A stretch of DNA of 63,827 bases, the filler included, from Reticulomyxa filosa (Eukaryota; Protista; Foraminifera): assembly GCA_000512085.1 (NCBI GenBank). It is 13 parts of 13 records of this genome, joined end to end, with 100 filler letters (N's around TTAATTAATTAA, not from the genome) between each part and the next. Parts side by side here need not be neighbours in the genome. Positions count along the whole stretch, not along the records: positions 11,181 to 20,479 come from ASPP01003195.1; 12 more parts are not named here. One strand, given 5' to 3'. The position numbers and the translations under genes are program-made. Below the pieces are notes generated by a model. It was not told the origin of the DNA. It saw nothing but the letters and a program-made list of their open reading frames with translations, and made no database searches. Below, in pieces: positions 11,181-20,479 of the stretch; positions within the stretch are counted from its first letter, which is position 1, and each line of letters opens with the position of its first letter.

Positions 11181-14100
11181 TGGAGGTTGCCAATATTGAG
11201 TTGTCCCCACAGATCATGTTCATTCGCGTGCGTGGACCTTCGGACGAGGTTTTCAAATTCTGCTCGAGAAATGTCCCCACTTTGATCCAAGTCCAAACAA
11301 ACGAATGCACTTATCAATGCATTGACTCGTTTTTGTTCTCTTTTATGTTGCGTTGCCGCTCTTGCCGCTTTGAAGGATGCCTCAAAGCGATTGATCGTCA
11401 TTGGCAAGAATGCATACAACGAAATTAACAAGACGACCAAGAAGAACAGTAAATTCAATGTGGAGATATCCTTTGCTGGATATACCACATTGTTATAGTT
11501 ATCAGACCCGACAATAAATACAAAGCTAGTGATCAGCGCTCGACTAACTTGCTCAAAGTTATCATAGCTTTGTCCTTCATTGAGCGTCCCTGCAAACAGA
11601 TCCATTCCCAACGCAGAGGTCACAAAGACCATACAAAAGCCTAAAAAAAGGACATCTCGAGCTTTGGCAATGCCCCGAGAAACATCAAACAAAGCATTAA
11701 AGAGTTGGGTGTTGCGAACGACCAATAGCAACGGGTGAACAGGAACGTAATACGAAAACGGAGAAACGCGAATGCTGACTGCGCAAATAAACGACAGCAA
11801 CACCAACACGACAAGCAACCCGTGAATCAAAAAGCGAAGTTCCCCTGGCCCAATCAATGCTCTTATCACATGATTTTCGTGATATTTGAACCAAAACATG
11901 GGACGATACCCGTCAAAGCCACTGAGAGATAACTTTTGTAAATCTTGCAAGATTTGTGATGTGGTTTGTTGGTCTCCATTTTTCGTGTGGTGACTTTTGA
12001 AACGAAAATAGCGAATGAAGAATTGCACGGCCAAGTCCAAAATTTCGATGACAATGCAAAAGATGGAAACAGCAACGATCCAGTGTTTCAGGCCATGTTG
12101 CTGCAGCTGCGAAGGGGTGGAAGGTTCCCAGCACGCCAACAAAATATGCAGAGCAATGACAAAGGTGACCAAGGCATCATACCAATTGTGTGAAAACGTT
12201 TCGACGAATTTCACATGAAACCAATCATTGTTCGTTTCCATTTGACATTTTTCAAACATGAACATTTTGCCATGATCTCGATCTTGTAATTCCATGTGTT
12301 GAACTGCACGATTAGATAAAAAGAACTTGGCTTGACTCATAGTTGTCGCCAATGCAATTCCTTCTCGCAATTCTTTTTGTTGCATTTCTTCCTTCCACAC
12401 AGCATTGCAAGCATTCAACACAATCCGCTGTACATCCCGCTTAATATCTTCATACGATCGTTCCACTTTCTGATAGTGCTCATCTTCCTTTTGTTTGGCC
12501 TTGTTGCGAATATGCTCGGACAGCACGGTGAAAAACACTGCCATGAGTGCCATTGTGATCAACATCACCATTTGATCCGAAAAATGCACTGTCATCGAGG
12601 GCAATGACATCAACGAGCAAACGATCCAATCCAAATTGTAATAAAAAAACACACTTTCTTGGTCAATGTGTGTGTCATAATAGCGAATACGACTGGCCGT
12701 GAGTTGCGGAAAATCGAGCGGCAGAGAAATTGTCTTGAGAGAAGAGTTGGAATTGACCGGCAATTGATCGATCCCGTGCACTTGGATAATCTCTTCACTT
12801 GCAATGGAAATATATCGATTGGGATAATTGGTCGACCAATACAAATTCGAAAACGTGGTAAACTCCTCCAATCCCAAATACGTGCCGATACCTTGTTCCG
12901 TTTGAGGATTGAAGATTGGACCATCCGAAGAGGCCACCATGTAATTGCTCACGTCATTCTCAAACACCCACGACGTGGAATTCGGATGCTTCCCGCGTCT
13001 GGTTGTTTCCACGCCTAGCGAATTCATTCCCAAGTAGTGTCCAATGTCCTCGGCAAAAAAAAATATTGTTACTGCCCCTATCCATTCGTTGTTCTTATCT
13101 ACTAAGGCTTTGGACGCGCTCAGTGTAAGGACTGTATCACTGTTGATTTTCACATTACATGTATGATATTTTAAAACGTGTCATAAGTTAAATTGTATAT
13201 ATACATATATATATATATGTATACATATGTAAATGTATAAACGCACACGCGCGCAAATACGCACATACTCTTGCAACACGAGTTTGGTCCACGCGACATC
13301 AGGCACAATGTCTCGAGACTGTTCCTGACTAGAGTTGAAAAATATATCTTGATAAATTTTTCTGGCGCGTTCGCATTCGGCAGTGTTGAGTGGCAGCGAG
13401 GTTTCGTTGAGATAGTTGAGAGTACCGTCGGTGCGTCCGTCGAAGGTGTAATTCATGGCGGCGACGAAATAAGAGCGACAGCGAACATCAAAGCTGTCAT
13501 TGTATCCCTTTTCGGCAGTGAAATAGACGGTGGTGAGATTGTCGTTAATCGAGTTGTAATTGTAGCTAGTAAGGATCATTCCGCCATCGGGGAACATTAA
13601 AAAGATTTCATAGATATCAAACAGACCCGATTTAATTTCGCGAAGGCCGCTTTGCAAAGACAACAAAAAAGGCTCAAAGTCTCTTGGCTTGGTGTAATCA
13701 AAGTCGCCACGACGGATTTTCGCCTCAGTCGAGTCCACTGTGACCTGTACGAGTTGGAACATGCGATACACCTTGCTTTCCATTATCGCGTGCTGCGCGA
13801 ATGTTACGCTCTCTTGCAACCCTGTCAACGACACTGCGTCCGACCAGCATATGCAAATGACCAAGAAGCACACGCACAGCACGATTTGAATCAAGCGAAC
13901 AAACTGGCCAAGCATGGCTATTTGCGCTTGCATTTTCGTCCTCACCGCGTCGAATCGCCGCTTTTGTGGGCTGATTTCCGTTTTCCGCAGACTGTTGTCG
14001 TCGTTGTCACTGCTCACATACTTATCCCGGCTTGATAATGGCGATACGTTAGCACACCAAACACAAGCAAGCACGACGTGACAATCGCCACAAAAATGCC

Positions 14101-15439
14101 GACCCTGGCCATTGATATCTCAAATAAGTCGGAATTTTTGATTATCACAATTGTTTATATATAAATAAATAAATATGTATGTACATATGTATACGTATAC
14201 GTATATACATACATATATGTATATGTTCATGCTTAATGTAAAGCAAAGGGGGGGGGGGGGGAAAAAAAAAAAAGAAAAAAAAAAAAAAAAAACCGGCCCA
14301 GAGATCATCCGCTGTGAAGTTGCTGTAAGAAAAATGTGGAACAAACGTGACGGGGACAGTGGCATGGAACTGACGAGTGGACATGGAATAGGTGCTGCCG
14401 TCAAGGTAATCGAAGAAGGAAAATCCGGGGACGGGTTTGAAGAAGTTGCGAAGCGAGTGGACGAACAAAGATTGATCAACAGGTGGATATTGCATCCAAA
14501 TATGATTGTTTGCGTCGACAATGTACCAGGAGCTTTTTTCGGTGACGGACAGCTGCTGCAATGTGTGTTCGGTGGGGAGTTGGAAATCGACGACGAATAC
14601 GTACGCAGTATCGCCACTGAGATTGGTGGCCAAGTGATACACTAGACTGGTGCCTACGACGACTTCCTCGTCGCTGGTGGTGGATTGTAATGAATACGGC
14701 GACGTCCATTGTGGGTTGTTGCTTTGCTCGGAACGAGTGTCTACGTACCATTGACTTTCATTGATAGAAAAAGGATGACACATGACCTTATCATACGACA
14801 ACGCGACGAGACGCGTGTCAGTGGTATCATTGATCGGTAACACGTAGTAGCAACGACGGGTGAAATTGTATACGACAATCTCAAAACAGGCTTGCACGAC
14901 AGCATCACACGGAACGATGCGCTTACTCCTTACCATTATGCTCGTGTTTTGATTATACACGCCCACAGCGAAAATATCTTCCGCGTTTCGGAAACGCCGA
15001 AATTGCAACAGAAAGGCGTCCGACGACCCGTTTGTATCGTTGGTCAAATCCGCTTGCAAGTCGCCCGTGTACAACCCGCCCACTGTCAATTGCAGGAACT
15101 GGTTGGGAACACTCAGGAATCGCGTCAGCACATTCACCACGTGCGTCGAGCTCACGTTGTGCGCGGGCTTCAGCGTCCGTTCGATCTCGCCGAGGCCACG
15201 GTATGACATGTACAAACTCGAAAATAGCGACCCGGCCATCAATGCGACGAACAGTAGCACGTACACGAGCGCATACAACATACGAATTTCCAGGTCGAAG
15301 CTTTTCAATTTGGTTTTTTTCTGTGTCTTTCGAGTCTTGTTTTCTTTTGATACTTGATCCGTCGTATATTTGGTCAACACATAGAACGCTGTCCCTCTAT
15401 CTTCAAACATAAGGGTCATTTTTTCATTCTTATCATTGC

Positions 15440-15470
<31 letters not shown>

Positions 15471-18022
15471 GTCATTGTTATTATTGTGGTTATATGGCTT
15501 TATCCATTGCTGATTCATCATTTGCTGAGCCAAGCGCACACATTTCATACGGGATGTTCGAGTTTCATTCAGCAGCCAATCCACAATTTCTATTGCGTGC
15601 ACGTGCACGTGCGCATGTAAACATGTGTGTTCATGACTTGCAGTCACAAAAAAAAAAAAATTGCAAAATATACATGTATATGTGTATATGTACATATATG
15701 TATATATATGTACATAAAGACCTTTTCCTGACAAACACTGATCATATGTCTCATAGAAATACGTATAGTTTCTTCAATGGAATGGACTCGTGCATGGTGC
15801 TGGCCAAGTCGTGGAGTCGGGTCGGCGTGAGTGGATCGCTCTTGTCTTCCGACGCGTGCACATCGTCGATGAGGTATCCAGGGAAGTGACGAATGAATCG
15901 ATCTTGGATGGATTCGTTCGAACACAAAAAAGCCAAAATGTTGTCGATTTTGTCAAAGAACACGCCGTCGTCTTTCCAAAATTGCAAAGGGCCAAACTCC
16001 CATCCAAGTCGCAACATTCGAATCACCTTGGCCACTTCCAGCAGCTCGGGTTTATCCGTTGCATCTTTGTCCAATTGGACCCACGTGTTTTGATATACCC
16101 TTTCAAAGTGTGACTTTACCGCAAAGTCCTTCACGTGTCGTGCAATGTTCTTGCAGTAGTCTTGGCGTTTGCTCTGTGTATCGTATGTTGTCATTTCGTC
16201 TTTGCTTTCATTGTTATCATTTTCGCTTTCACTTTCATGTTCATGTTCATGTTCATTCTCCTTACCATTGCCATTTTGTGTTTCTTTTGCATTTTCACTT
16301 TGCGTAGATTTGTCTCTGCGTTTGCTCTCCGCTTTATCGCCAAACACGATTTCGAATATGTGCGAGTCTTTCAATAGTAACAACTCCGCCCCTGAAATTT
16401 TCAGTTTCCCAAACTTCCTGGCAACATACGCGTATCCACAAGATTGCAAAAACGTCACTACTTGAGGATACTCTATCATATTTGTATATATGTAATATGA
16501 TAGGAGTAATATATAATGAAACAACCAAATAACATTTTCATTCCTCAATCACTTTTCTTGCACAATCCAATACATATGCATATATGACATAGTGTTCATA
16601 GGATTGAGTGTTTTTACTTGTTGTCATTATTTTTGTTTTTGTTTTTTTGTTTCGGTATGTGTAAAATGTATGTAAACAACACACTGACCCCATTCGACCA
16701 TAAGCAAGTTCGTGGCGAGGGTATCTTGACCGCTGACAATTTGCTCAATCACTTTGCGACACTTGTGTTGATCGTGGTAGTCGTACTGCTGTCTTTGGAA
16801 AAACCATTTGCGAAAGTCGTTCTTCGTGCGGCATTCCAACAGTTGCTGTGCCACCTCAAATCGTTGGTCCACTTTTGTGTAGTCATGCGACACTGTGCTC
16901 CAGCGACTCAGGCCAGTCCGTCCGCCTTCCATTTTGTTCACGTCATCCTTTTCGCTACTCGTCGATGCTTGTTGCTTTCGCATTTGCTTTGACACTTTCA
17001 TTTCTTCAATCTTTTGGTATTTATTTGTATATGCATATATATATGTGTATACGTACACACATACAACTTAACACTAAATTAGTTAATACGTAAAATGTAA
17101 GAGTATTTCTTTTTTTTTTTATGCATGTTTTCTTTTTTCCTAAAAAAAAAATTTTTTAAAAAGTGTACGTATTTTTCAAAAAAAAAAAAAAACAATGAAC
17201 ATAGATACGTAAAAAAAAAAAAAAATCCAAATTCTTAACAAATAAATATCTAGTTTCTTTAACCCAATCCTCAAAGACATCCCACTCGCTGTTGTTGTGT
17301 GTCCTCTCGCCATTGTTCCATCTGTCTTTACATCCTGCAAACTATCTCGAAATGCTTTGTTTTGCGACTCGATGCTTGCTTCATTCCCTTGCTTTTTTTG
17401 TCGGCTGAATTGTATTAGTTTTGTCACTGACTCCCTTACTGCCTTTACTTTGTTCGTCCATTCACTTTCCATTTTTTTTTTTTTTTTTTTGAACAGAAAA
17501 GACAAAAGGTTAGAGTGAAACAAAAAAATTATATAATTTTTTCGCTTCTTCAGTTTAGTACCTGTCCAGTTGATCGATTTGTTGGGGGTCGATTTTATTC
17601 CTTTTTCCAAGTAATATATGCATTCGTTCCTGTATTTTCTCTTGCGGCCATTCCTCGGTTGACAATGTGGCATTAACTAGTCCCACCATCTCTTGCTTCG
17701 TGTCCATGGCTTCTTTTTCTTGGGGCTCGTCCCTCTTTTCTTCTTTTTCTTTTTCGTTGATACATGGTATGTCGTCTTGTGTACTGTGACATAACAACAA
17801 TAGGATCTTGCAAAGAGGGAAACTTTTTCTCTCCCTCACCCTTTTTTTTCATTTGCTCCCCCCCTCAAAACTAAACAACAAAAACACCAGAGCGTCCACC
17901 AGTTGATAATAGGAGAAGATCTCGTTTTCTTCTGCTGTCTCTGATAACTCTCCTGACGCTTTCACTTCTGTGATTTCTTTTATTGTTAGGCCCAATTGCA
18001 CCTCTGTTGAATTGGTCGACAT
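11181..18022 (-). CDS. Multi-exon SAM-DEP-(TM-dCache-like-TM)x2-TPC-like channel (gene B, 3' truncated)
   Basis: Putative ATG 18022 (MSTNSTEVQ). Spliced SAM VEW|EYPQVVTFLQSCGYAYVARKFGKLKISGAELLLL; spliced DEP CLSGK|EIVDWLL...CVRLAQQMMNQQWI...FEDRGTAFY. Two sequon-rich domains between TM helices with QWY...PQWTSPY...VFVVD and VAWTK...LSASKALVDKNNEWIGAV. Channel repeat LACWEP...NFEQVSRALITSFVFIVGSDNYNNVVYP; EF-hand DLDQSGDISRAEF. A single gene needs three 1-nt homopolymer corrections (~17328, ~15758, ~14028) and one AA acceptor (14151-14152). Confidence 0.7.
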
Positions 18023-18303
18023 CCTTCGCCAACTGGATACTACTCTTCCAGGGCCTGCACGTTTGCAAAAAAAAAAAAGTACTAAAAACTTGTCACTCTT
18101 TAAATACTTGACACAATTTCTTTAATTTTATTTGAACAAACTTTCAATTAAAGCTCATCATGATTTTGGACCTGTTGCAGAATGAATTATCTTTATTTTT
18201 TAAATTACAAACAAAAAGTTTCAATCAAATTATTGTGCAACATGCTTACTTCTGCAAGTTTTCAAATAACATTACAATCAGAATATTTGAAAATGCAAAA
18301 ATG

Positions 18304-19800
18304 TTAATGTTCGACAGATTTCTCTTCAGTTAATATTTCTTCTTCATCATCAAAATCAACAACAACATCTTGTTTATCTTGATAGGAAAGAATCATGTCA
18401 CGAACATTTTGATTACAACTAAAGAATTCCATTTCGTCCATCCCTTCACTTGTGTACCAATGTAAAAATGCTTTTCGTTTGAGCATACGATCAAAAGAGT
18501 CTGAAATTCTTTGAAACACAGCCTTAATAGAAGTAGTATTTGCTATAAAGGTTCCACTTAAATAAGTATTTTTTGCTGGGACTGAAACAATTGCCATTTT
18601 AATATTATCAGGAATCCAGTTTACAAAATCTTCAGCCATTTTTTCGGAAATACATCGTAAAGGATTTTCTTCAGGCATTTGAAAACTTTCACCACGATAA
18701 ATTAAAGCTGCACCCAAATATTTTCCGTCTCTAACAGCTACATTTGCCATACAGGTTTGAGAAGACCACATTTGATCAGTAATTTCTCGAAATGATAATT
18801 TTGCTTTTGTTTTTTCTCCAAATGCAAATAAAGGAGCTTGAGTAACTAATAAAAAATGCAGACGAGGAAATGGAACCAAATTCATTGCCATTTTCCTTAA
18901 ATCATTATTTAATTTGACAGGAAATCTATATTAATGAAATGTAAATATTTTTTTTTTTTATAATTAAATAAATAATTTTTTTTAACCGTAATGAAGATGT
19001 AATTCCTGCCATTACTGATGAAGCAATCCAATTTAATTCTTTGTATTTTAATTGTGATTGTTTCAATACCTTGTATGAAATATTGTATAGCGCGTCATTA
19101 TCTATTACAAAACATTCATTGCAATTATCAATAATTCTATCAATAGTCAATATCGTATTGTATGGTTCAACAGCTACATTATTTGCTTTTAGACTTGGAC
19201 ATACGCTATACGTGGCTATAATATTATCCGAAAATTTGTCTCGAATTTGATGTAGTAATAATGATCCTAAACCACTTCCTGTACCACCACCTAATGAGTG
19301 AGTTATTTGAAATCCTTGAAGGGCATCACATAACTAAATTTTTTGTTTATTTATATTCAACATATGTACAATTATAGATCCTTTTTTTCTTTCTTTAAAA
19401 CTTCGGCTTCTTTTCTGATGACTTCCATACATTCTTCAATCACTTGATCTCCTTCTGTATAATATCCTTTTCCCCAATTACTTGCTGCTCCTCCTGTTCC
19501 AGAAATAAAATTATCTAATTTAAACATTCTTCCTGTTGGTGCTGTTTTTATCAAATCTATTATCCCTGGTTCCAAATCAATCAATATCGATCGAGGTATG
19601 TATTGATTAATTGCTTTCTCATTTTGTCTGAAATACACACCAATCTTGTCCAAAAGTATTTGATCATTAGATTTGTTTGGACTTGAAACAAAGGTGCCAT
19701 CTTCAAGTAAATGATGCTCTTTGCAAACTGTCTCCCAAAACATAGCACCAATTAGATTACCACATTCACCTACTTGCATATGAAGTATTTCACGCACCAT
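18304..19800 (-). CDS. Highly divergent beta-tubulin (foraminiferan type-2-like)
   Basis: MVREILHMQVGECGN, ILIDLEPG, HSLGGGTGSG, VEPYN, DLRKMAMNLVPFPRLHF, KAFLHWYTSEGMDEMEF. Exons 19800-19402, 19333-18987, 18925-18304 with GT-AG introns. Confidence 0.95.
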
Positions 19801-20479
19801 TTTTCTTTCAATTCGAATGAAGAGTTAATGTCAAAACCCTTCAATTGAAGATACCTTCAACAAAAAGACCAAACAAAAAGGGGGGTTTTAAAGCAAAAAC
19901 ACAGGACACTGGCAGAAGCAAGTGAATAACGGATTACAATGAGCACTTGCTCTCCAAAATGACCAAAATTACAAAAAAGGAGAACCAACAAATAAAATCA
20001 AAAAAATATATCCACAGTTTAACTACGACCACATAACAATTTGTGCCTATTCGGATTAAATCATCCAGATTACAATCTTTGGGAATGTAAAAAATAGCAA
20101 ATGTGTTATCACTTTAGAATCTTTCCAAAAAAAAAAGACTATGATCTACCTTTTTCATTTTATTTCGTATCTGAAAAAGGTGTCCCCAAACAAGGTTGTT
20201 CAATTGTGTTTTCCAAAGTGCGGACATTTCAATGAAGTAAATCAAATATCGAATACATTATCAATACTGTCGTTTGGCTTCAATTTAATGATGCACTCAG
20301 AAGTAACAAATCACCTTAAAAAAAAATTGAAATTAAACCTCTCCGTCAACAGCTCTTCGATTCTTTGCCTTATACGGCAAATTACGCATATGGACAATTT
20401 CCAACAAATCTTTGTTGTTCGAAATTTGCTTCGCAACGTCCAGTGCAACTACGAGACACTCTTCAGCGACCATGTTTTG

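What the first reader, a model, noticed from the sequence alone, without database searches (positions are those of the whole stretch)
11181..18022. TPC-like channel fused to two dCache-like sensor domains plus SAM and DEP: candidate receptor-channel
Seen: a chain of minus-strand exons gives SAM, DEP, TM, sequon-rich domain 1, TM, TM, sequon-rich domain 2, TM, a 6TM channel repeat (LACWEP, pore ..FIVGSDNYNNVVYP) and an EF-hand. Established: dCache_1 domains are small-molecule sensors flanked by two TM helices in chemoreceptors, and in animals they occur in alpha2-delta, a separate subunit of Cav channels. Described TPCs carry no such module. Inference: this is one polypeptide joining an extracellular/luminal ligand sensor to a TPC-type pore, i.e. 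a ligand-gated TPC. I know of no described protein with this layout.
Basis: partly seen in the sequence, partly recalled or inferred. Interest (0 to 1): 0.92.

Follow-up and report, generated by a model that had tools for sequence, protein, structure and literature searches.

The report
Cache-type sensors fused to cation channel
In the foraminifer Reticulomyxa filosa, what the database lists as four or five small unknown genes is most likely one large gene. It joins two bacterial-style extracellular chemical-sensor domains to a two-pore-type cation channel, a layout I could not find described, although this particular copy carries three small defects that may be assembly errors or decay.

Summary
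The piece is R. filosa contig ASPP01003195. On its minus strand, in order, lie:
- a SAM-like segment (sub-threshold);
- a DEP domain;
- TM1, a sequon-rich ectodomain and TM2;
- a short loop;
- TM3, a second ectodomain and TM4;
- a charged linker;
- an Ion_trans 6TM repeat with the pore FVFIVGSDNYNNVVYPA;
- an EF-hand, where the contig edge cuts the gene.

NCBI splits this into four same-strand "hypothetical proteins".

Three other loci show the parts belong together. Two are R. filosa paralog contigs and one is a metagenome contig. They carry SAM-like plus DEP plus TM plus sensor in one ORF, TM2 to TM3 in one ORF, and the second sensor through the channel in one ORF. One paralog adds a second EF-hand and a second 6TM repeat.

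Both ectodomains look like double-PDC/dCache_1 domains. The evidence is several weak results that agree: language-model neighbours, an ESM Atlas model, VIA Z up to 10.2, and the YxxxxRxWY…TEPY motif region. My own AlphaFold models were poor.

Channel repeat I aligns colinearly with Arabidopsis TPC1 through the filter, S6 and EF-hand 1, but only at E about 0.01.

This copy has two 1-nt frame breaks and lacks the AG acceptor its paralog uses. No reads could be obtained. Ligand gating is inference.

The parts
16690..17022 (-). Upstream cytosolic exon ('exon E'), ending ...LLMVEW plus G. The donor GT is at 16688-16687. Further 5' exons up to the ATG at 18022 (start of an NCBI model) are possible but have no homology support.
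   Evidence: tblastn to L005 (E 5e-5); junction read; NCBI model spans 18022-16627.
15722..16472 (-). Exon D. It holds a SAM-like segment (16472 to about 16333), an acidic low-complexity insert, a conserved FGPLQFWKDDGVFFDKIDN block (15996-15940) and the DEP N-terminal half RNYTYFYETYDQCLSGK (15773-15723). A 1-nt frame break lies within 15777-15768, giving an apparent stop at 15753-15751.
   Evidence: tblastn to the single ORF of L005 (E 1.5e-19 and 3e-4) and to L002; SAM_2 E 0.11 in L005; PDB profile hits to SAM domains at E 0.15-1; frames.
15590..15721 (-). Intron inside the DEP domain (GT at 15721-15720, AG at 15591-15590, phase 1). It is filled with a TATAC/TATGT microsatellite and a T run.
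   Evidence: Splicing gives CLSGK-EIVDWLL, matching CVTGKEIVDWVL in the uninterrupted ORF of L005.
15372..15589 (-). DEP domain C-terminal half, with a poly-Asn insert.
   Evidence: Pfam DEP 25.8 bits, profile positions 21-71; 27.1 bits in NCBI protein P0004; pN 0.29 against pS 0.77 versus L001.
15222..15278 (-). TM1 (LYALVYVLLFVALMAGSLF).
   Evidence: Hydropathy 2.34; conserved in L001.
14295..15206 (-). Ectodomain 1 (304 aa, 9 N-glycosylation sequons), double-PDC/dCache_1-like. The motif region is FSINESQWY (14771-14745), WTSPY (14708-14694) and YVFVVDF (14603-14583).
   Evidence: Atlas features match dCache_1, MCP-like_PDC_1 and HK sensor clusters. Fold searches of a low-confidence AF2 model (pLDDT 43) give VIA Z 10.2 to 3lid, 8.7 to 7k5n and 7-8 to TlpC, TlpA, Tlp3 and Mlp24, out of 48,161 chains. 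Atlas shape hits are mostly dCache_1. The family profile aligns to Mlp24 at YDPRKRPWY...TEPY, E about 1. pN/pS is 0.42 with pS saturated.
14119..14293 (-). Intron after ectodomain 1 (donor GT at 14293-14292), containing G14 and A runs and a microsatellite. The acceptor homologous to the paralog's would lie at 14152-14151, but the window reads AA there. The only AG is at 14120-14119.
   Evidence: side-by-side reading of L001 and the window.
14047..14103 (-). TM2 (VGIFVAIVTSCLLVFGVLT) followed by RHYQ, read in frame 1. A 1-nt frame break lies within 14031-14026 (GCCGGG), giving an apparent stop at 14016-14014.
   Evidence: Hydropathy 2.54; 47% identical to TM2 of L001, pN 0.33 against pS 0.66; in L001 and L005, TM2 and TM3 lie in one ORF.
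13847..14026 (-). Short cytosolic loop and TM3 (FVRLIQIVLCVCFLVICIC, 13903-13847).
13269..13840 (-). Ectodomain 2, first part (long helix and first PDC module). It holds FDVRCRSYF (13492-13466) and VAWTKLVLQ (13297-13271). The donor GT is at 13268-13267.
   Evidence: pN/pS 0.23-0.45 versus L001. The paralog's spliced product P0003 has dCache_1 clusters among its Atlas feature neighbours and in 10 of 10 structure rows, TM 0.47-0.56.
13140..13268 (-). Intron inside ectodomain 2 (GT...AG, phase 2).
   Evidence: Splicing gives LVLQ-D-DTVLTLSASK, the same length as LILQ-G-DNALTLSASK in P0003.
12581..13139 (-). Ectodomain 2, second part, in the same open frame as the channel.
   Evidence: 65-82% identity to L001.
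12518..12574 (-). TM4 (QMVMLITMALMAVFFTVLS).
12188..12517 (-). Charged cytosolic linker of about 110 residues between TM4 and S1.
   Evidence: 62% identity to L001, pN 0.21 against pS 0.80.
11393..12187 (-). Channel repeat I: S1 12184-12128, S2 12082-12026, S3 11833-11777, S4 11737-11687 (one Arg), S5 11653-11597, pore/filter 11524-11474, S6 11449-11393.
   Evidence: Pfam Ion_trans 32.8 bits. PDB matches: Cav1.3 E 0.0044, and Arabidopsis TPC1 E 0.0093, colinear over residues 157-343.
11181..11392 (-). Post-S6 helix and EF-hand 1 (loop 11293-11258), cut by the contig edge. In paralog P0002, EF-hand 2 and 6TM repeat II follow.
   Evidence: L001 frames.

Best explanation
The window holds roughly the first four-fifths of one large multi-exon gene of Reticulomyxa filosa. 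It is currently annotated as four separate same-strand hypothetical proteins, among them RFI_03410 and RFI_03408.

The encoded membrane protein reads, from the N-terminus:
- a cytosolic SAM-like segment and a DEP domain;
- TM1, a double-PDC (dCache_1-like) ectodomain, TM2;
- a short cytosolic loop;
- TM3, a second dCache_1-like ectodomain, TM4;
- a charged linker of about 110 residues;
- a 6TM voltage-gated-like cation-channel repeat;
- an EF-hand pair and a second 6TM repeat. Both lie beyond the contig edge here and are seen in the paralog.

The overall body plan is that of a two-pore channel.

Shown: the order of the parts, their conservation, their physical continuity, and a self-consistent topology. 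With four TM helices, both sensors face outside or the lumen and S1 starts from the cytosol.

Inferred mechanism:
- The protein works as a homodimer, as both dCache receptors and two-repeat channels do.
- Ligand binding in an ectodomain displaces its C-terminal helix (TM4), as in bacterial chemoreceptors and sensor kinases.
- Through the helical linker, this displacement biases the first voltage-sensor-like bundle or the gate.
- The EF-hands add Ca2+ feedback, and DEP and SAM provide membrane or partner anchoring.

This particular copy departs from an intact reading at three places: two 1-nt frame breaks and an AA where the paralog has its AG acceptor. These are either errors of a very fragmented draft assembly or signs that this copy is decaying.
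For: Identity and annotation.

Continuity:
- One open frame runs from 13180 to 11183, covering the ectodomain 2 C-half, TM4, the linker, the channel and the EF-hand.
- L001 is colinear from window 15593 to 11187. There TM2 to TM3 is one ORF, and the GT-AG introns I checked match in phase.
- L005 has SAM-like plus the full DEP (43.2 bits) in one ORF, then the sensor, then TM2, loop and TM3 in one ORF.
- Metagenome protein P0005 has SAM-like, DEP, TM and sensor in one uninterrupted 677-aa ORF, followed by TM2.
- The two tight gaps between NCBI's gene calls are 55 and 147 nt. The genome's median intergenic distance is 426 nt and its mean intron length 87 nt (PMC13746701).

Constraint: pN is 0.10-0.38 against pS 0.62-0.98 in all 13 segments.

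Topology: sequons are enriched in the ectodomains, p = 0.0009.

Cache fold. MCP-like_PDC_1 scores E 0.012 and 0.018 in two relatives at the aligned motif.

Channel: Ion_trans; two Ion_trans stretches plus EF-hands in P0002; a colinear alignment to AtTPC1 across filter, S6 and EF-hand 1.
Against: - No RNA or read evidence. No run was listed.
- The window copy needs two frame corrections and a non-AG acceptor to give the conserved reading.
- If the real AG at 14120-14119 is used, the frame stays open into exon B. TM2 is then replaced by a weakly hydrophobic out-of-frame segment, which would upset the topology.
- Both of my AlphaFold models are low-confidence (pLDDT 43 and 33). The second gave no meaningful fold match.
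- No Pfam Cache model reaches significance on the window's own sequence.
- hhalign does not link ectodomain 1 to ectodomain 2.
- Affinity to TPCs is marginal and tied with Cav.
- No channel relative outside R. filosa was found.
Confidence: 0.72

Rival explanations
1. The family architecture is real, but this window's copy is a pseudogene: a recently disabled duplicate of an intact sensor-channel gene such as the one on ASPP01013277.
For: There are two 1-nt frame breaks (15777-15768 and 14031-14026), and AA in place of the paralog's AG acceptor at 14152-14151. The acceptor difference is a substitution, which is not the usual homopolymer-type error. R. filosa has several paralogs. Over the parts I checked, L001 has none of these defects.
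Against: Apart from these three sites there is no in-frame stop in about 1,900 codons of exons. pN is well below pS in every segment, including those next to the breaks. Both frame breaks sit in short homopolymer contexts (GAAGAAAC and GCCGGG). The assembly is a low-contiguity draft with N50 of 3.6 kb. Paralog L005 also shows an odd in-frame stop, which suggests draft-level errors are common.
Confidence: 0.3
2. One polypeptide, but the Cache-like ectodomains do not gate the pore. They act as a built-in auxiliary module, like alpha2-delta or CACHD1 for Cav channels, serving trafficking, matrix or partner binding or slow modulation, while voltage and Ca2+ open the channel.
For: In animals the Cache-bearing alpha2-delta modulates trafficking and current rather than gating (PMC8915833). 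Ectodomain 1 of the window has lost the Arg of the YxxxxRxWY motif, and ectodomain 2 has lost the PY and D positions (aligned by eye). The paralog's repeat II has an S4-like segment with several Arg, and EF-hands are present.
Against: Each ectodomain is bracketed by two TM helices in the bacterial transducer manner, with no VWA insertion. The TM4 to S1 linker is as conserved as the channel, at 62% identity. S4 of repeat I carries only one Arg.
Confidence: 0.3
3. The database annotation is right: these are several neighbouring genes (a SAM/DEP protein, one or two two-TM sensor proteins and a separate channel), possibly working together as subunits.
For: NCBI calls separate genes here and on both paralog contigs. 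Apparent stops lie at 15753-15751 and 14016-14014. There is no transcript evidence.
Against: The supposed channel gene's own open frame begins in the middle of ectodomain 2. P0005 and L005 carry SAM-like, DEP, TM and sensor, or TM2 to TM3, in single ORFs. The models end at intron-like microsatellites with in-phase GT-AG boundaries. The two tight gaps, 55 and 147 nt, are far below the median intergenic distance. NCBI's RFI_03408 even splices out the conserved pore filter.
Confidence: 0.08
4. The ectodomains are not Cache/PDC domains. The resemblance is an artefact of low-confidence models and language-model neighbours.
For: pLDDT is 43 and 33. All Pfam and PDB sequence hits to Cache are sub-threshold. 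The tool notes that Z of 7-8 is common for models without true matches. The Foldseek search of the sensor 2 model gave nothing.
Against: Four differently built lines of evidence point to the same fold for two unrelated-looking domains. The lines are ESM features, the ESM Atlas model, the AF2 model with an exhaustive VIA search, and the HMM alignment at the ligand-binding motif. In the VIA search the first 18 or so of 48,161 chains are extracellular PDC sensors, with Z up to 10.2 over 197 residues. The two-TM bracketing and the size of about 300 aa are typical of dCache.
Confidence: 0.12

Closest known systems
Plant-type two-pore channel TPC1 (Arabidopsis TPC1, PDB 5E1J/6E1K)
   Same: Two 6TM Ion_trans repeats in one chain, with an EF-hand pair in the linker between them (seen in paralog P0002). 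Repeat I of the window aligns colinearly through S5, the filter (GSDNYNNVVYPA against TSNN-PDVWIPA), S6 and EF-hand 1. S4 of repeat I is poor in charges.
   Different: Similarity is marginal (E 0.009) and no better than to Cav1.3. Repeat II matches Cav1 and no TPC. TPCs have a short cytosolic N-terminus, with no SAM/DEP, no extra TM helices and no ectodomains.
Bacterial dCache_1 transducers (chemoreceptors such as PctA, Mlp24 and Tlp3; sensor kinases such as KinD, DctB and vpHK1S-Z8)
   Same: An ectodomain of about 300 aa bracketed by two TM helices, with a long N-terminal helix and two PDC modules. The motif region (Y/F)xxxxRxW(Y/F)...W(T)EPY is kept in relatives P0006 to P0008. These are the best fold matches.
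   Different: The output here is an ion channel rather than a kinase, an MCP signalling domain or a cyclase. Two sensors sit in tandem, each with its own TM pair. There is no HAMP domain. The host is eukaryotic and the ectodomains are sequon-rich.
Alpha2-delta and CACHD1 subunits of animal voltage-gated Ca2+ channels
   Same: dCache_1-type extracellular domains functionally attached to a voltage-gated-like cation channel (PMC8915833, PMC4822843).
   Different: Those are separate polypeptides. Their dCache_1 carries a VWA insertion and one dCache is nested inside the other. Gumerov et al. state that all eukaryotic dCache_1 proteins they found have the VWA insertion. Here there is no VWA, the two sensors are in tandem, and they are covalently fused to the pore.
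Prokaryotic pentameric ligand-gated channels with N-terminal MCP-N/Cache domains (Tasneem et al. 2005, PMC549065)
   Same: A Cache sensor fused in one chain to an ion channel.
   Different: A different channel superfamily (Cys-loop/pLGIC, pentameric). These are prokaryotic. The Cache domain precedes another ligand-binding domain rather than a TM pair and a voltage-gated-like pore.

Membership tests
Voltage-gated-like cation channel superfamily (Pfam Ion_trans, PF00520) | A 6TM repeat matching the Ion_trans profile above the curated cut-off | tested here: met
   32.8 bits against a cut-off of 25, E 5.4e-8, residues 322-587 of the exon A product; 43.1 bits with two stretches in P0002.
Two-pore channels (TPC) | Exactly two tandem 6TM repeats in one polypeptide | tested here: inconclusive
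   The window is cut after EF-hand 1. Paralog P0002/L001 has repeat II, then a charged tail and a stop. That contig ends about 600 nt later, so further exons cannot be excluded.
Two-pore channels (TPC) | Closer in sequence to TPCs than to other voltage-gated-like channels | tested here: inconclusive
   For repeat I, AtTPC1 scores E 0.0093 and Cav1.3 E 0.0044. Repeat II matches Cav1.2 at E 1.9e-6 with no TPC among the 60 rows shown. No phylogeny was possible because no other relatives were retrieved.
Two-pore channels (TPC), plant TPC1 type | An EF-hand pair in the cytosolic linker between repeats I and II | tested here: met
   In P0002, EF-hand_1 scores 21.2 bits (E 1.8e-4) and EF-hand_7 matches in two stretches. 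All are below Pfam cut-offs but in the right position. The window's EF-hand 1 aligns with AtTPC1 EF-hand 1.
dCache_1 / double-PDC extracellular sensors (Pfam clan CL0165) | Match to a Cache-clan profile above the curated cut-off | tested here: not met
   No Cache family appears at E up to 1 on the window's ectodomains. The best results are MCP-like_PDC_1 at 15.9 and 16.5 bits (cut-off 27) in relatives P0005 and P0007.
dCache_1 / double-PDC extracellular sensors (Pfam clan CL0165) | Fold: a long N-terminal helix followed by two PDC (PAS-like alpha/beta) modules | tested here: inconclusive
   The evidence agrees but rests on weak models. Sensor 1: AF2 pLDDT 43; VIA Z 10.2 (3lid, 197 residues aligned), 8.7 (7k5n) and 7-8 for many dCache LBDs, ranking first among 48,161 chains. 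Sensor 2: the ESM Atlas model (pTM 0.58) has dCache_1 in 10 of 10 neighbour rows, TM 0.47-0.56. My own AF2 model of sensor 2 failed.
dCache_1 / double-PDC extracellular sensors (Pfam clan CL0165) | Extracytoplasmic location between two TM helices | tested here: met
   TM1/TM2 and TM3/TM4 bracket the two domains. Sequons are enriched in them, p = 0.0009.
dCache_1AA (amino-acid-binding subtype, Gumerov et al. 2022) | AA_motif: Y121, R126, W128 and then Y144, D173 (PctA numbering) | tested here: not met
   Aligned by eye, anchored on the HMM alignment to Mlp24. Sensor 1 reads F....S.WY / WTSPY / FVVD, so the Arg is replaced by Ser. Sensor 2 reads F....R.YF but lacks the PY and D positions. Relatives P0007 and P0008 keep F....R.WY and the downstream Tyr (TEPY in P0007, TDSY in P0008).
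DEP domain (PF00610) | Match above the curated cut-off | tested here: met
   43.2 bits against a cut-off of 32.7 in the homologous single ORF of L005. In the window the domain is split by an intron and a frame break; its C-half alone scores 25.8 bits and its N-half aligns to L005.
SAM domain (PF00536/PF07647) | Match above the curated cut-off | tested here: not met
   No hit in the window. SAM_2 scores 13.1 bits (cut-off 20.5) in L005. A three-sequence profile finds the SAMHD1, EPS8, GABPA and SAMD1 SAM/pointed domains only at E 0.15-1. It is best called SAM-like.

The most novel reading that the evidence does not exclude
Foraminifera possess a receptor-channel class not seen elsewhere: a homodimeric two-pore-type cation channel opened directly by small molecules that bind to covalently attached, bacterial-style dCache sensors without a VWA insertion. 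It would convert an extracellular or luminal chemical cue into a Ca2+/cation signal in one protein. It would also be a fused counterpart of the Cav plus alpha2-delta pairing.
Probability: 0.3. Interest if true: 0.9.

Novelty: new variant of a known kind. Interest (0 to 1): 0.72.

Why it matters
Cache domains are the commonest extracellular sensors of prokaryotes. In eukaryotes they are known mainly from alpha2-delta and CACHD1, which are separate subunits of Ca2+ channels whose natural ligands and signalling role are still debated.

A protein in which dCache-type sensors are physically wired to a voltage-gated-like pore would give a direct system to test. The question is whether Cache-to-channel coupling can be a gating mechanism and not only a trafficking aid.

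It would also contradict the published generalisation that all eukaryotic dCache_1 domains carry a VWA insertion. It would add a ligand-sensor branch to the two-pore or two-repeat channels, which are usually placed between one-repeat and four-repeat channels in evolution. And it would offer a candidate chemosensory Ca2+ entry route in foraminifera, whose pseudopodial behaviour depends on Ca2+.

Practically, it shows that several R. filosa "hypothetical proteins" are fragments of one gene and need re-annotation.

Tried and rejected
Reads
- Public reads: none listed for 11181-18100. Read laying could therefore not be used, and the frame breaks, the acceptor and expression remain unchecked.

Structure prediction
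- The AlphaFold model of ectodomain 2, from a 3-row alignment headed by NCBI's partly mis-spliced P0001, failed at pLDDT 33. Its Foldseek list is noise.
- The AlphaFold model of ectodomain 1 reached only pLDDT 43. I used its fold hits only as supporting evidence.

Homology searches
- The exhaustive HMMER search with ectodomain 1 gave 5 proteins. The profile word search gave 2. The family is tiny in current databases, so no deep alignment could be made.
- The word-index searches with the channel found only R. filosa proteins.
- Both metagenome scans found no relatives.
- hhalign of ectodomain 1 against ectodomain 2 was not significant. It paired only the R.WY and R.(Y/F)F motif regions.
- phmmer of the whole channel of P0002 against PDB gave nothing at E up to 0.01. 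Single repeats had to be searched separately.

Literature
- The R. filosa genome paper is not held, so the sequencing chemistry is not documented here.

Rejected readings
- An acceptor upstream of 14152: the only AG, near 14233, leads straight into a stop.
- A mini-intron at either frame break: the sequences are too short and the phase is wrong.

- I did not build, fold or search a joined spliced protein. Every search used single exons by reference or database proteins (P0001 to P0008).

Full report
**Origin and current annotation**

The piece 11181-20479 is the complete 9,299-base contig ASPP01003195.1 of the Reticulomyxa filosa draft genome. On the strand of interest (minus in the window) NCBI calls these genes:
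- a tubulin, 19800-18304;
- a 391-aa product, 18022-16627;
- a 242-aa product, 16479-15751;
- RFI_03410, 278 aa, 15695-14758 (P0004);
- the partial RFI_03408, 809 aa, 13933-11303 (P0001).

A 156-aa call sits on the opposite strand at 14175-14645.

Yes. Three-frame translation of the minus strand shows long open segments separated by AT-rich stretches full of microsatellites and homopolymers.
- Pfam finds Ion_trans above its cut-off (32.8 bits) and weak EF-hands in the 13180-11183 frame. It finds the C-terminal half of a DEP domain in the 15773-14148 frame.
- Hydropathy finds four helices bracketing two regions of about 300-380 residues, then the S1-S6 pattern.
- N-glycosylation sequons are concentrated in the two bracketed regions. 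There are 16 in 680 residues against 4 in 926 elsewhere, Fisher p = 0.0009. Ectodomain 1 has 9 where 3.3 are expected from its composition.

**Do the pieces belong to one gene?**

I searched exon by exon, by reference, and used database proteins where a spliced sequence was needed.

1. Within the window, one uninterrupted 666-codon frame covers the second half of ectodomain 2, TM4, a charged linker of about 110 residues, the whole 6TM repeat and EF-hand 1. The fusion of that ectodomain to the channel needs no splicing assumption.

2. Paralog contig L001 (ASPP01013277.1) is colinear with the window from 15593 to 11187. It carries the same order of parts and continues into a second EF-hand and a second Ion_trans repeat.
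   - There, TM2, the loop and TM3 lie in a single frame.
   - The introns I read have GT-AG boundaries and matching phases.
   - Their splice products are the same length as the window's continuous sequence.
   - NCBI nevertheless splits that locus into three genes.

3. Paralog contig L005 (ASPP01010679.1) has the exon-E-like region, the SAM-like segment, the conserved middle block and a complete DEP domain in one ORF (DEP 43.2 bits, above cut-off). The TM-sensor part (P0007) follows, then TM2, loop and TM3 in one ORF, up to the contig end.

4. A metagenome contig from another organism (L002, JGI 3300022707) encodes SAM-like, DEP, TM and sensor in one uninterrupted 677-aa ORF (P0005). A segment with the second TM helix follows.

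5. In the window, the junctions 16688/16473, 15721/15590 and 13268/13140 are canonical GT-AG introns of 216, 132 and 129 nt. Their phases restore sequences homologous to the uninterrupted ORFs elsewhere: MVEW-E-YPQVV, CLSGK-E-IVDWLL and LVLQ-D-DTVLTL.

6. Two of the gaps between NCBI's calls are 55 and 147 nt. The genome's median intergenic distance is 426 nt and its mean intron length 87 nt (PMC13746701).

7. Against L001, every segment shows far fewer non-synonymous than synonymous differences. This holds for the DEP half, TM1, sensor 1, TM2, loop plus TM3, the four parts of sensor 2, TM4, the linker, the channel and the EF-hand region. pN is 0.10-0.38 and pS 0.62-0.98, the latter saturated. 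All of it is constrained coding sequence.

8. Four TM helices before S1 place both ectodomains outside or in a lumen. They also put the N-terminus, the loop, the linker and the start of S1 in the cytosol, as a voltage-gated-like channel requires.

**What are the ectodomains?**

No Pfam Cache model reaches significance on the window. My two AlphaFold runs, limited to 6- and 3-row alignments because the family is tiny, gave pLDDT 43 and 33. Even so, several differently built lines agree.

- Language-model features. Ectodomain 1 of the window and ectodomain 2 of the paralog (P0003) have as nearest named clusters dCache_1, MCP-like_PDC_1, HK_sensor_dom_bact and HK-GC-Chemotax_sensor.
- ESM Atlas model. 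The Atlas's own model of P0003 (pTM 0.58) has dCache_1-bearing bacterial transducers in 10 of 10 neighbour rows, at TM 0.47-0.56 over about 200 residues.
- Exhaustive fold search. I aligned the ectodomain 1 model to all 48,161 PDB representatives without Foldseek. The best matches were the double-PDC domain of vpHK1S-Z8 (Z 10.2, 197 residues aligned, rmsd 5.7), a dCache diguanylate-cyclase sensor (7k5n, Z 8.7) and LuxQ (Z 8.1). TlpC, TlpA, Mlp24, CqsR, Tlp3, McpH, KinD, Tlp1, AHK4 and DctB followed at Z 7-7.8. The first 18 or so rows are all extracellular PDC sensors.
- Motif-level alignment. The six-sequence family profile aligns to the solved Mlp24 ligand-binding domain exactly at YDPRKRPWY...TEPY (E about 1). 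Two relatives hit MCP-like_PDC_1 at E 0.012 and 0.018 at the same place. [quoted passage not shown] (PMC8915833).

The motif varies across the family:

| Sequence | N-terminal part | Later positions |
|---|---|---|
| P0007 | FDPTTRPWY | WTEPY |
| P0008 | FDIHTRNWY | WTDSY |
| P0006 | YSPSLREWF | WTEPY |
| Window, ectodomain 1 | FSINESQWY (Arg replaced by Ser) | WTSPY and FVVD kept |
| Window, ectodomain 2 | FDVRCRSYF (Arg kept) | PY and D positions lost |

I conclude with moderate confidence that both are dCache_1-like double-PDC domains. Neither is a canonical amino-acid sensor. Ectodomain 1 keeps the half that contacts the amino group and has lost the carboxyl-binding Arg. This pattern recalls amine-binding derivatives, but that point is speculation from an alignment made by eye.

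Neither domain has a VWA insertion. Gumerov et al. report such an insertion in all eukaryotic dCache_1 proteins they found.

**What is the channel?**

It is a very divergent member of the voltage-gated-like superfamily. Word-index searches found no relatives outside R. filosa.
- Repeat I matches Cav1.3 (E 0.0044) and Arabidopsis TPC1 (E 0.0093). The TPC1 alignment is colinear over 190 residues. It runs through S5, the filter (GSDNYNNVVYPA against TSNN-PDVWIPA), S6, the post-S6 helix and EF-hand 1.
- The paralog's repeat II matches repeat II of Cav1 channels (E 2e-6) and no TPC. Its pore reads LLSVMVGQGWSS, followed by an S6 with the usual Asn.
- The body plan, two repeats with an EF-hand pair between them, is that of plant TPC1. 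Family membership in the phylogenetic sense could not be tested.
- The paralog contig ends about 600 nt after the apparent stop, so "only two repeats" is likely but not proven.

**Defects of this copy**

Relative to the conserved reading, the window has three defects.
- A 1-nt frame break within 15777-15768 (TTGAAGAAAC), inside the DEP N-half. L005 and P0005 read straight through the homologous stretch.
- AA at 14152-14151, where L001 has the AG acceptor of the TM2 exon.
- A 1-nt frame break within 14031-14026 (GCCGGG), between TM2 and the loop.

If the only available AG (14120-14119) is used, the frame runs open into exon B without any correction. The TM2 helix is then replaced by an out-of-frame, weakly hydrophobic segment. 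The two changes cancel in length (32 + 1 nt). This could be chance (one in three) or a real variant.

No sequencing run could be listed. I therefore cannot tell assembly error from decay. I put about 0.3 on this copy being a pseudogene. That would not affect the architecture, which L001 carries without these defects.

**Mechanism (inferred)**

Both dCache transducers and two-repeat channels work as homodimers, so a dimer would have four sensors around one pore. In bacterial transducers, ligand binding shifts the helix that leaves the membrane-proximal module. Here that helix is TM4, which leads through a conserved, charged, probably helical linker into S1 of a voltage-sensor-like bundle with a nearly uncharged S4.

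The simplest model has the sensor bias that bundle or the gate, with the EF-hands adding Ca2+ feedback and DEP and SAM-like providing membrane or partner anchoring.

An equally open alternative is an alpha2-delta-like auxiliary role built into the channel. The role of ectodomain 1, whose TM2 leads only to a loop of about 45 residues, is unclear. It might modulate ectodomain 2 or dimerisation.

**Comparison with what is known**

Each module is known: TPC/Cav-like pore, dCache sensor, DEP. Cache fused to a channel is known only for prokaryotic pentameric ligand-gated channels (PMC549065). Cache attached to a voltage-gated-like channel is known only as the separate alpha2-delta or CACHD1 subunits (PMC4822843, PMC8915833).

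Full-text searches for Cache with two-pore channels, and for Reticulomyxa with channels, found no description of this layout. That is not proof of absence. I rate it a new variant (a new domain architecture) of known kinds.

**Verdict**

The single-polypeptide sensor-channel architecture is well supported for the gene family, at about 0.7-0.75. Cache-type identity of the sensors is moderately supported. "TPC-type" holds by body plan only. "Ligand-gated" is untested, and the integrity and expression of this copy are unknown.

Noticed in passing
window 18304-19800 (minus strand): A divergent beta-tubulin-like gene in three coding pieces. Pfam gives Tubulin E 5.5e-24 and Tubulin_C E 3.2e-25. NCBI models it as 455 aa. 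It lies directly upstream of the sensor-channel gene on the same strand.
   Followed up: partly
window about 11545-11468 (P0001 against the open frame): NCBI model RFI_03408 joins NFEQ to DISTLN. That splices out VSRALITSFVFIVGSDNYNNVVYPAK, the pore helix and selectivity filter. The segment is open in frame and almost identical in paralog P0002, so this is a mis-predicted intron.
   Followed up: yes
window 14175-14645 (plus strand): NCBI calls a 156-aa gene here. It is antisense to ectodomain 1 and starts inside the intron's microsatellite and homopolymer tract (MYVHMYTYTYIH...GGGGKKKK), so it is probably spurious.
   Followed up: partly
window 14160-14292, 15600-15720, 13170-13265, 16480-16690, 17070-17250: The introns of this gene are filled with TATAC/TATGT-type microsatellites and long homopolymers (G14, A12 and A20 at 14244-14292). 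The same holds in the paralog contigs. Such tracts are likely sites of assembly error and of gene-model breaks.
   Followed up: no
L005 about 545-556: Paralog L005 has an in-frame stop (FNE*LRVRQQ) between the part homologous to window exon E and the SAM-like part. It may be a draft error, a small intron or the true start of that paralog.
   Followed up: no
L004 6624-7527 (RFI_25689, P0008): This family member has a TM helix plus a sensor-1-like domain, and the genes upstream are on the opposite strand. It apparently lacks SAM/DEP. The contig ends before any downstream part can be seen.
   Followed up: no
window 20336-20473 (minus strand, at the contig edge): A short ORF (46 aa, MVAEECLVVALDVAKQISNNKDLL...) with no Pfam match. 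It may be an exon of a gene cut by the contig end.
   Followed up: no
window 17179-18022 (minus strand): Open segments upstream of exon E, included in NCBI's 391-aa model that starts at the ATG at 18022. They have no homology in L001, L002, L004 or L005 and no Pfam match. Whether they belong to the gene is open.
   Followed up: partly
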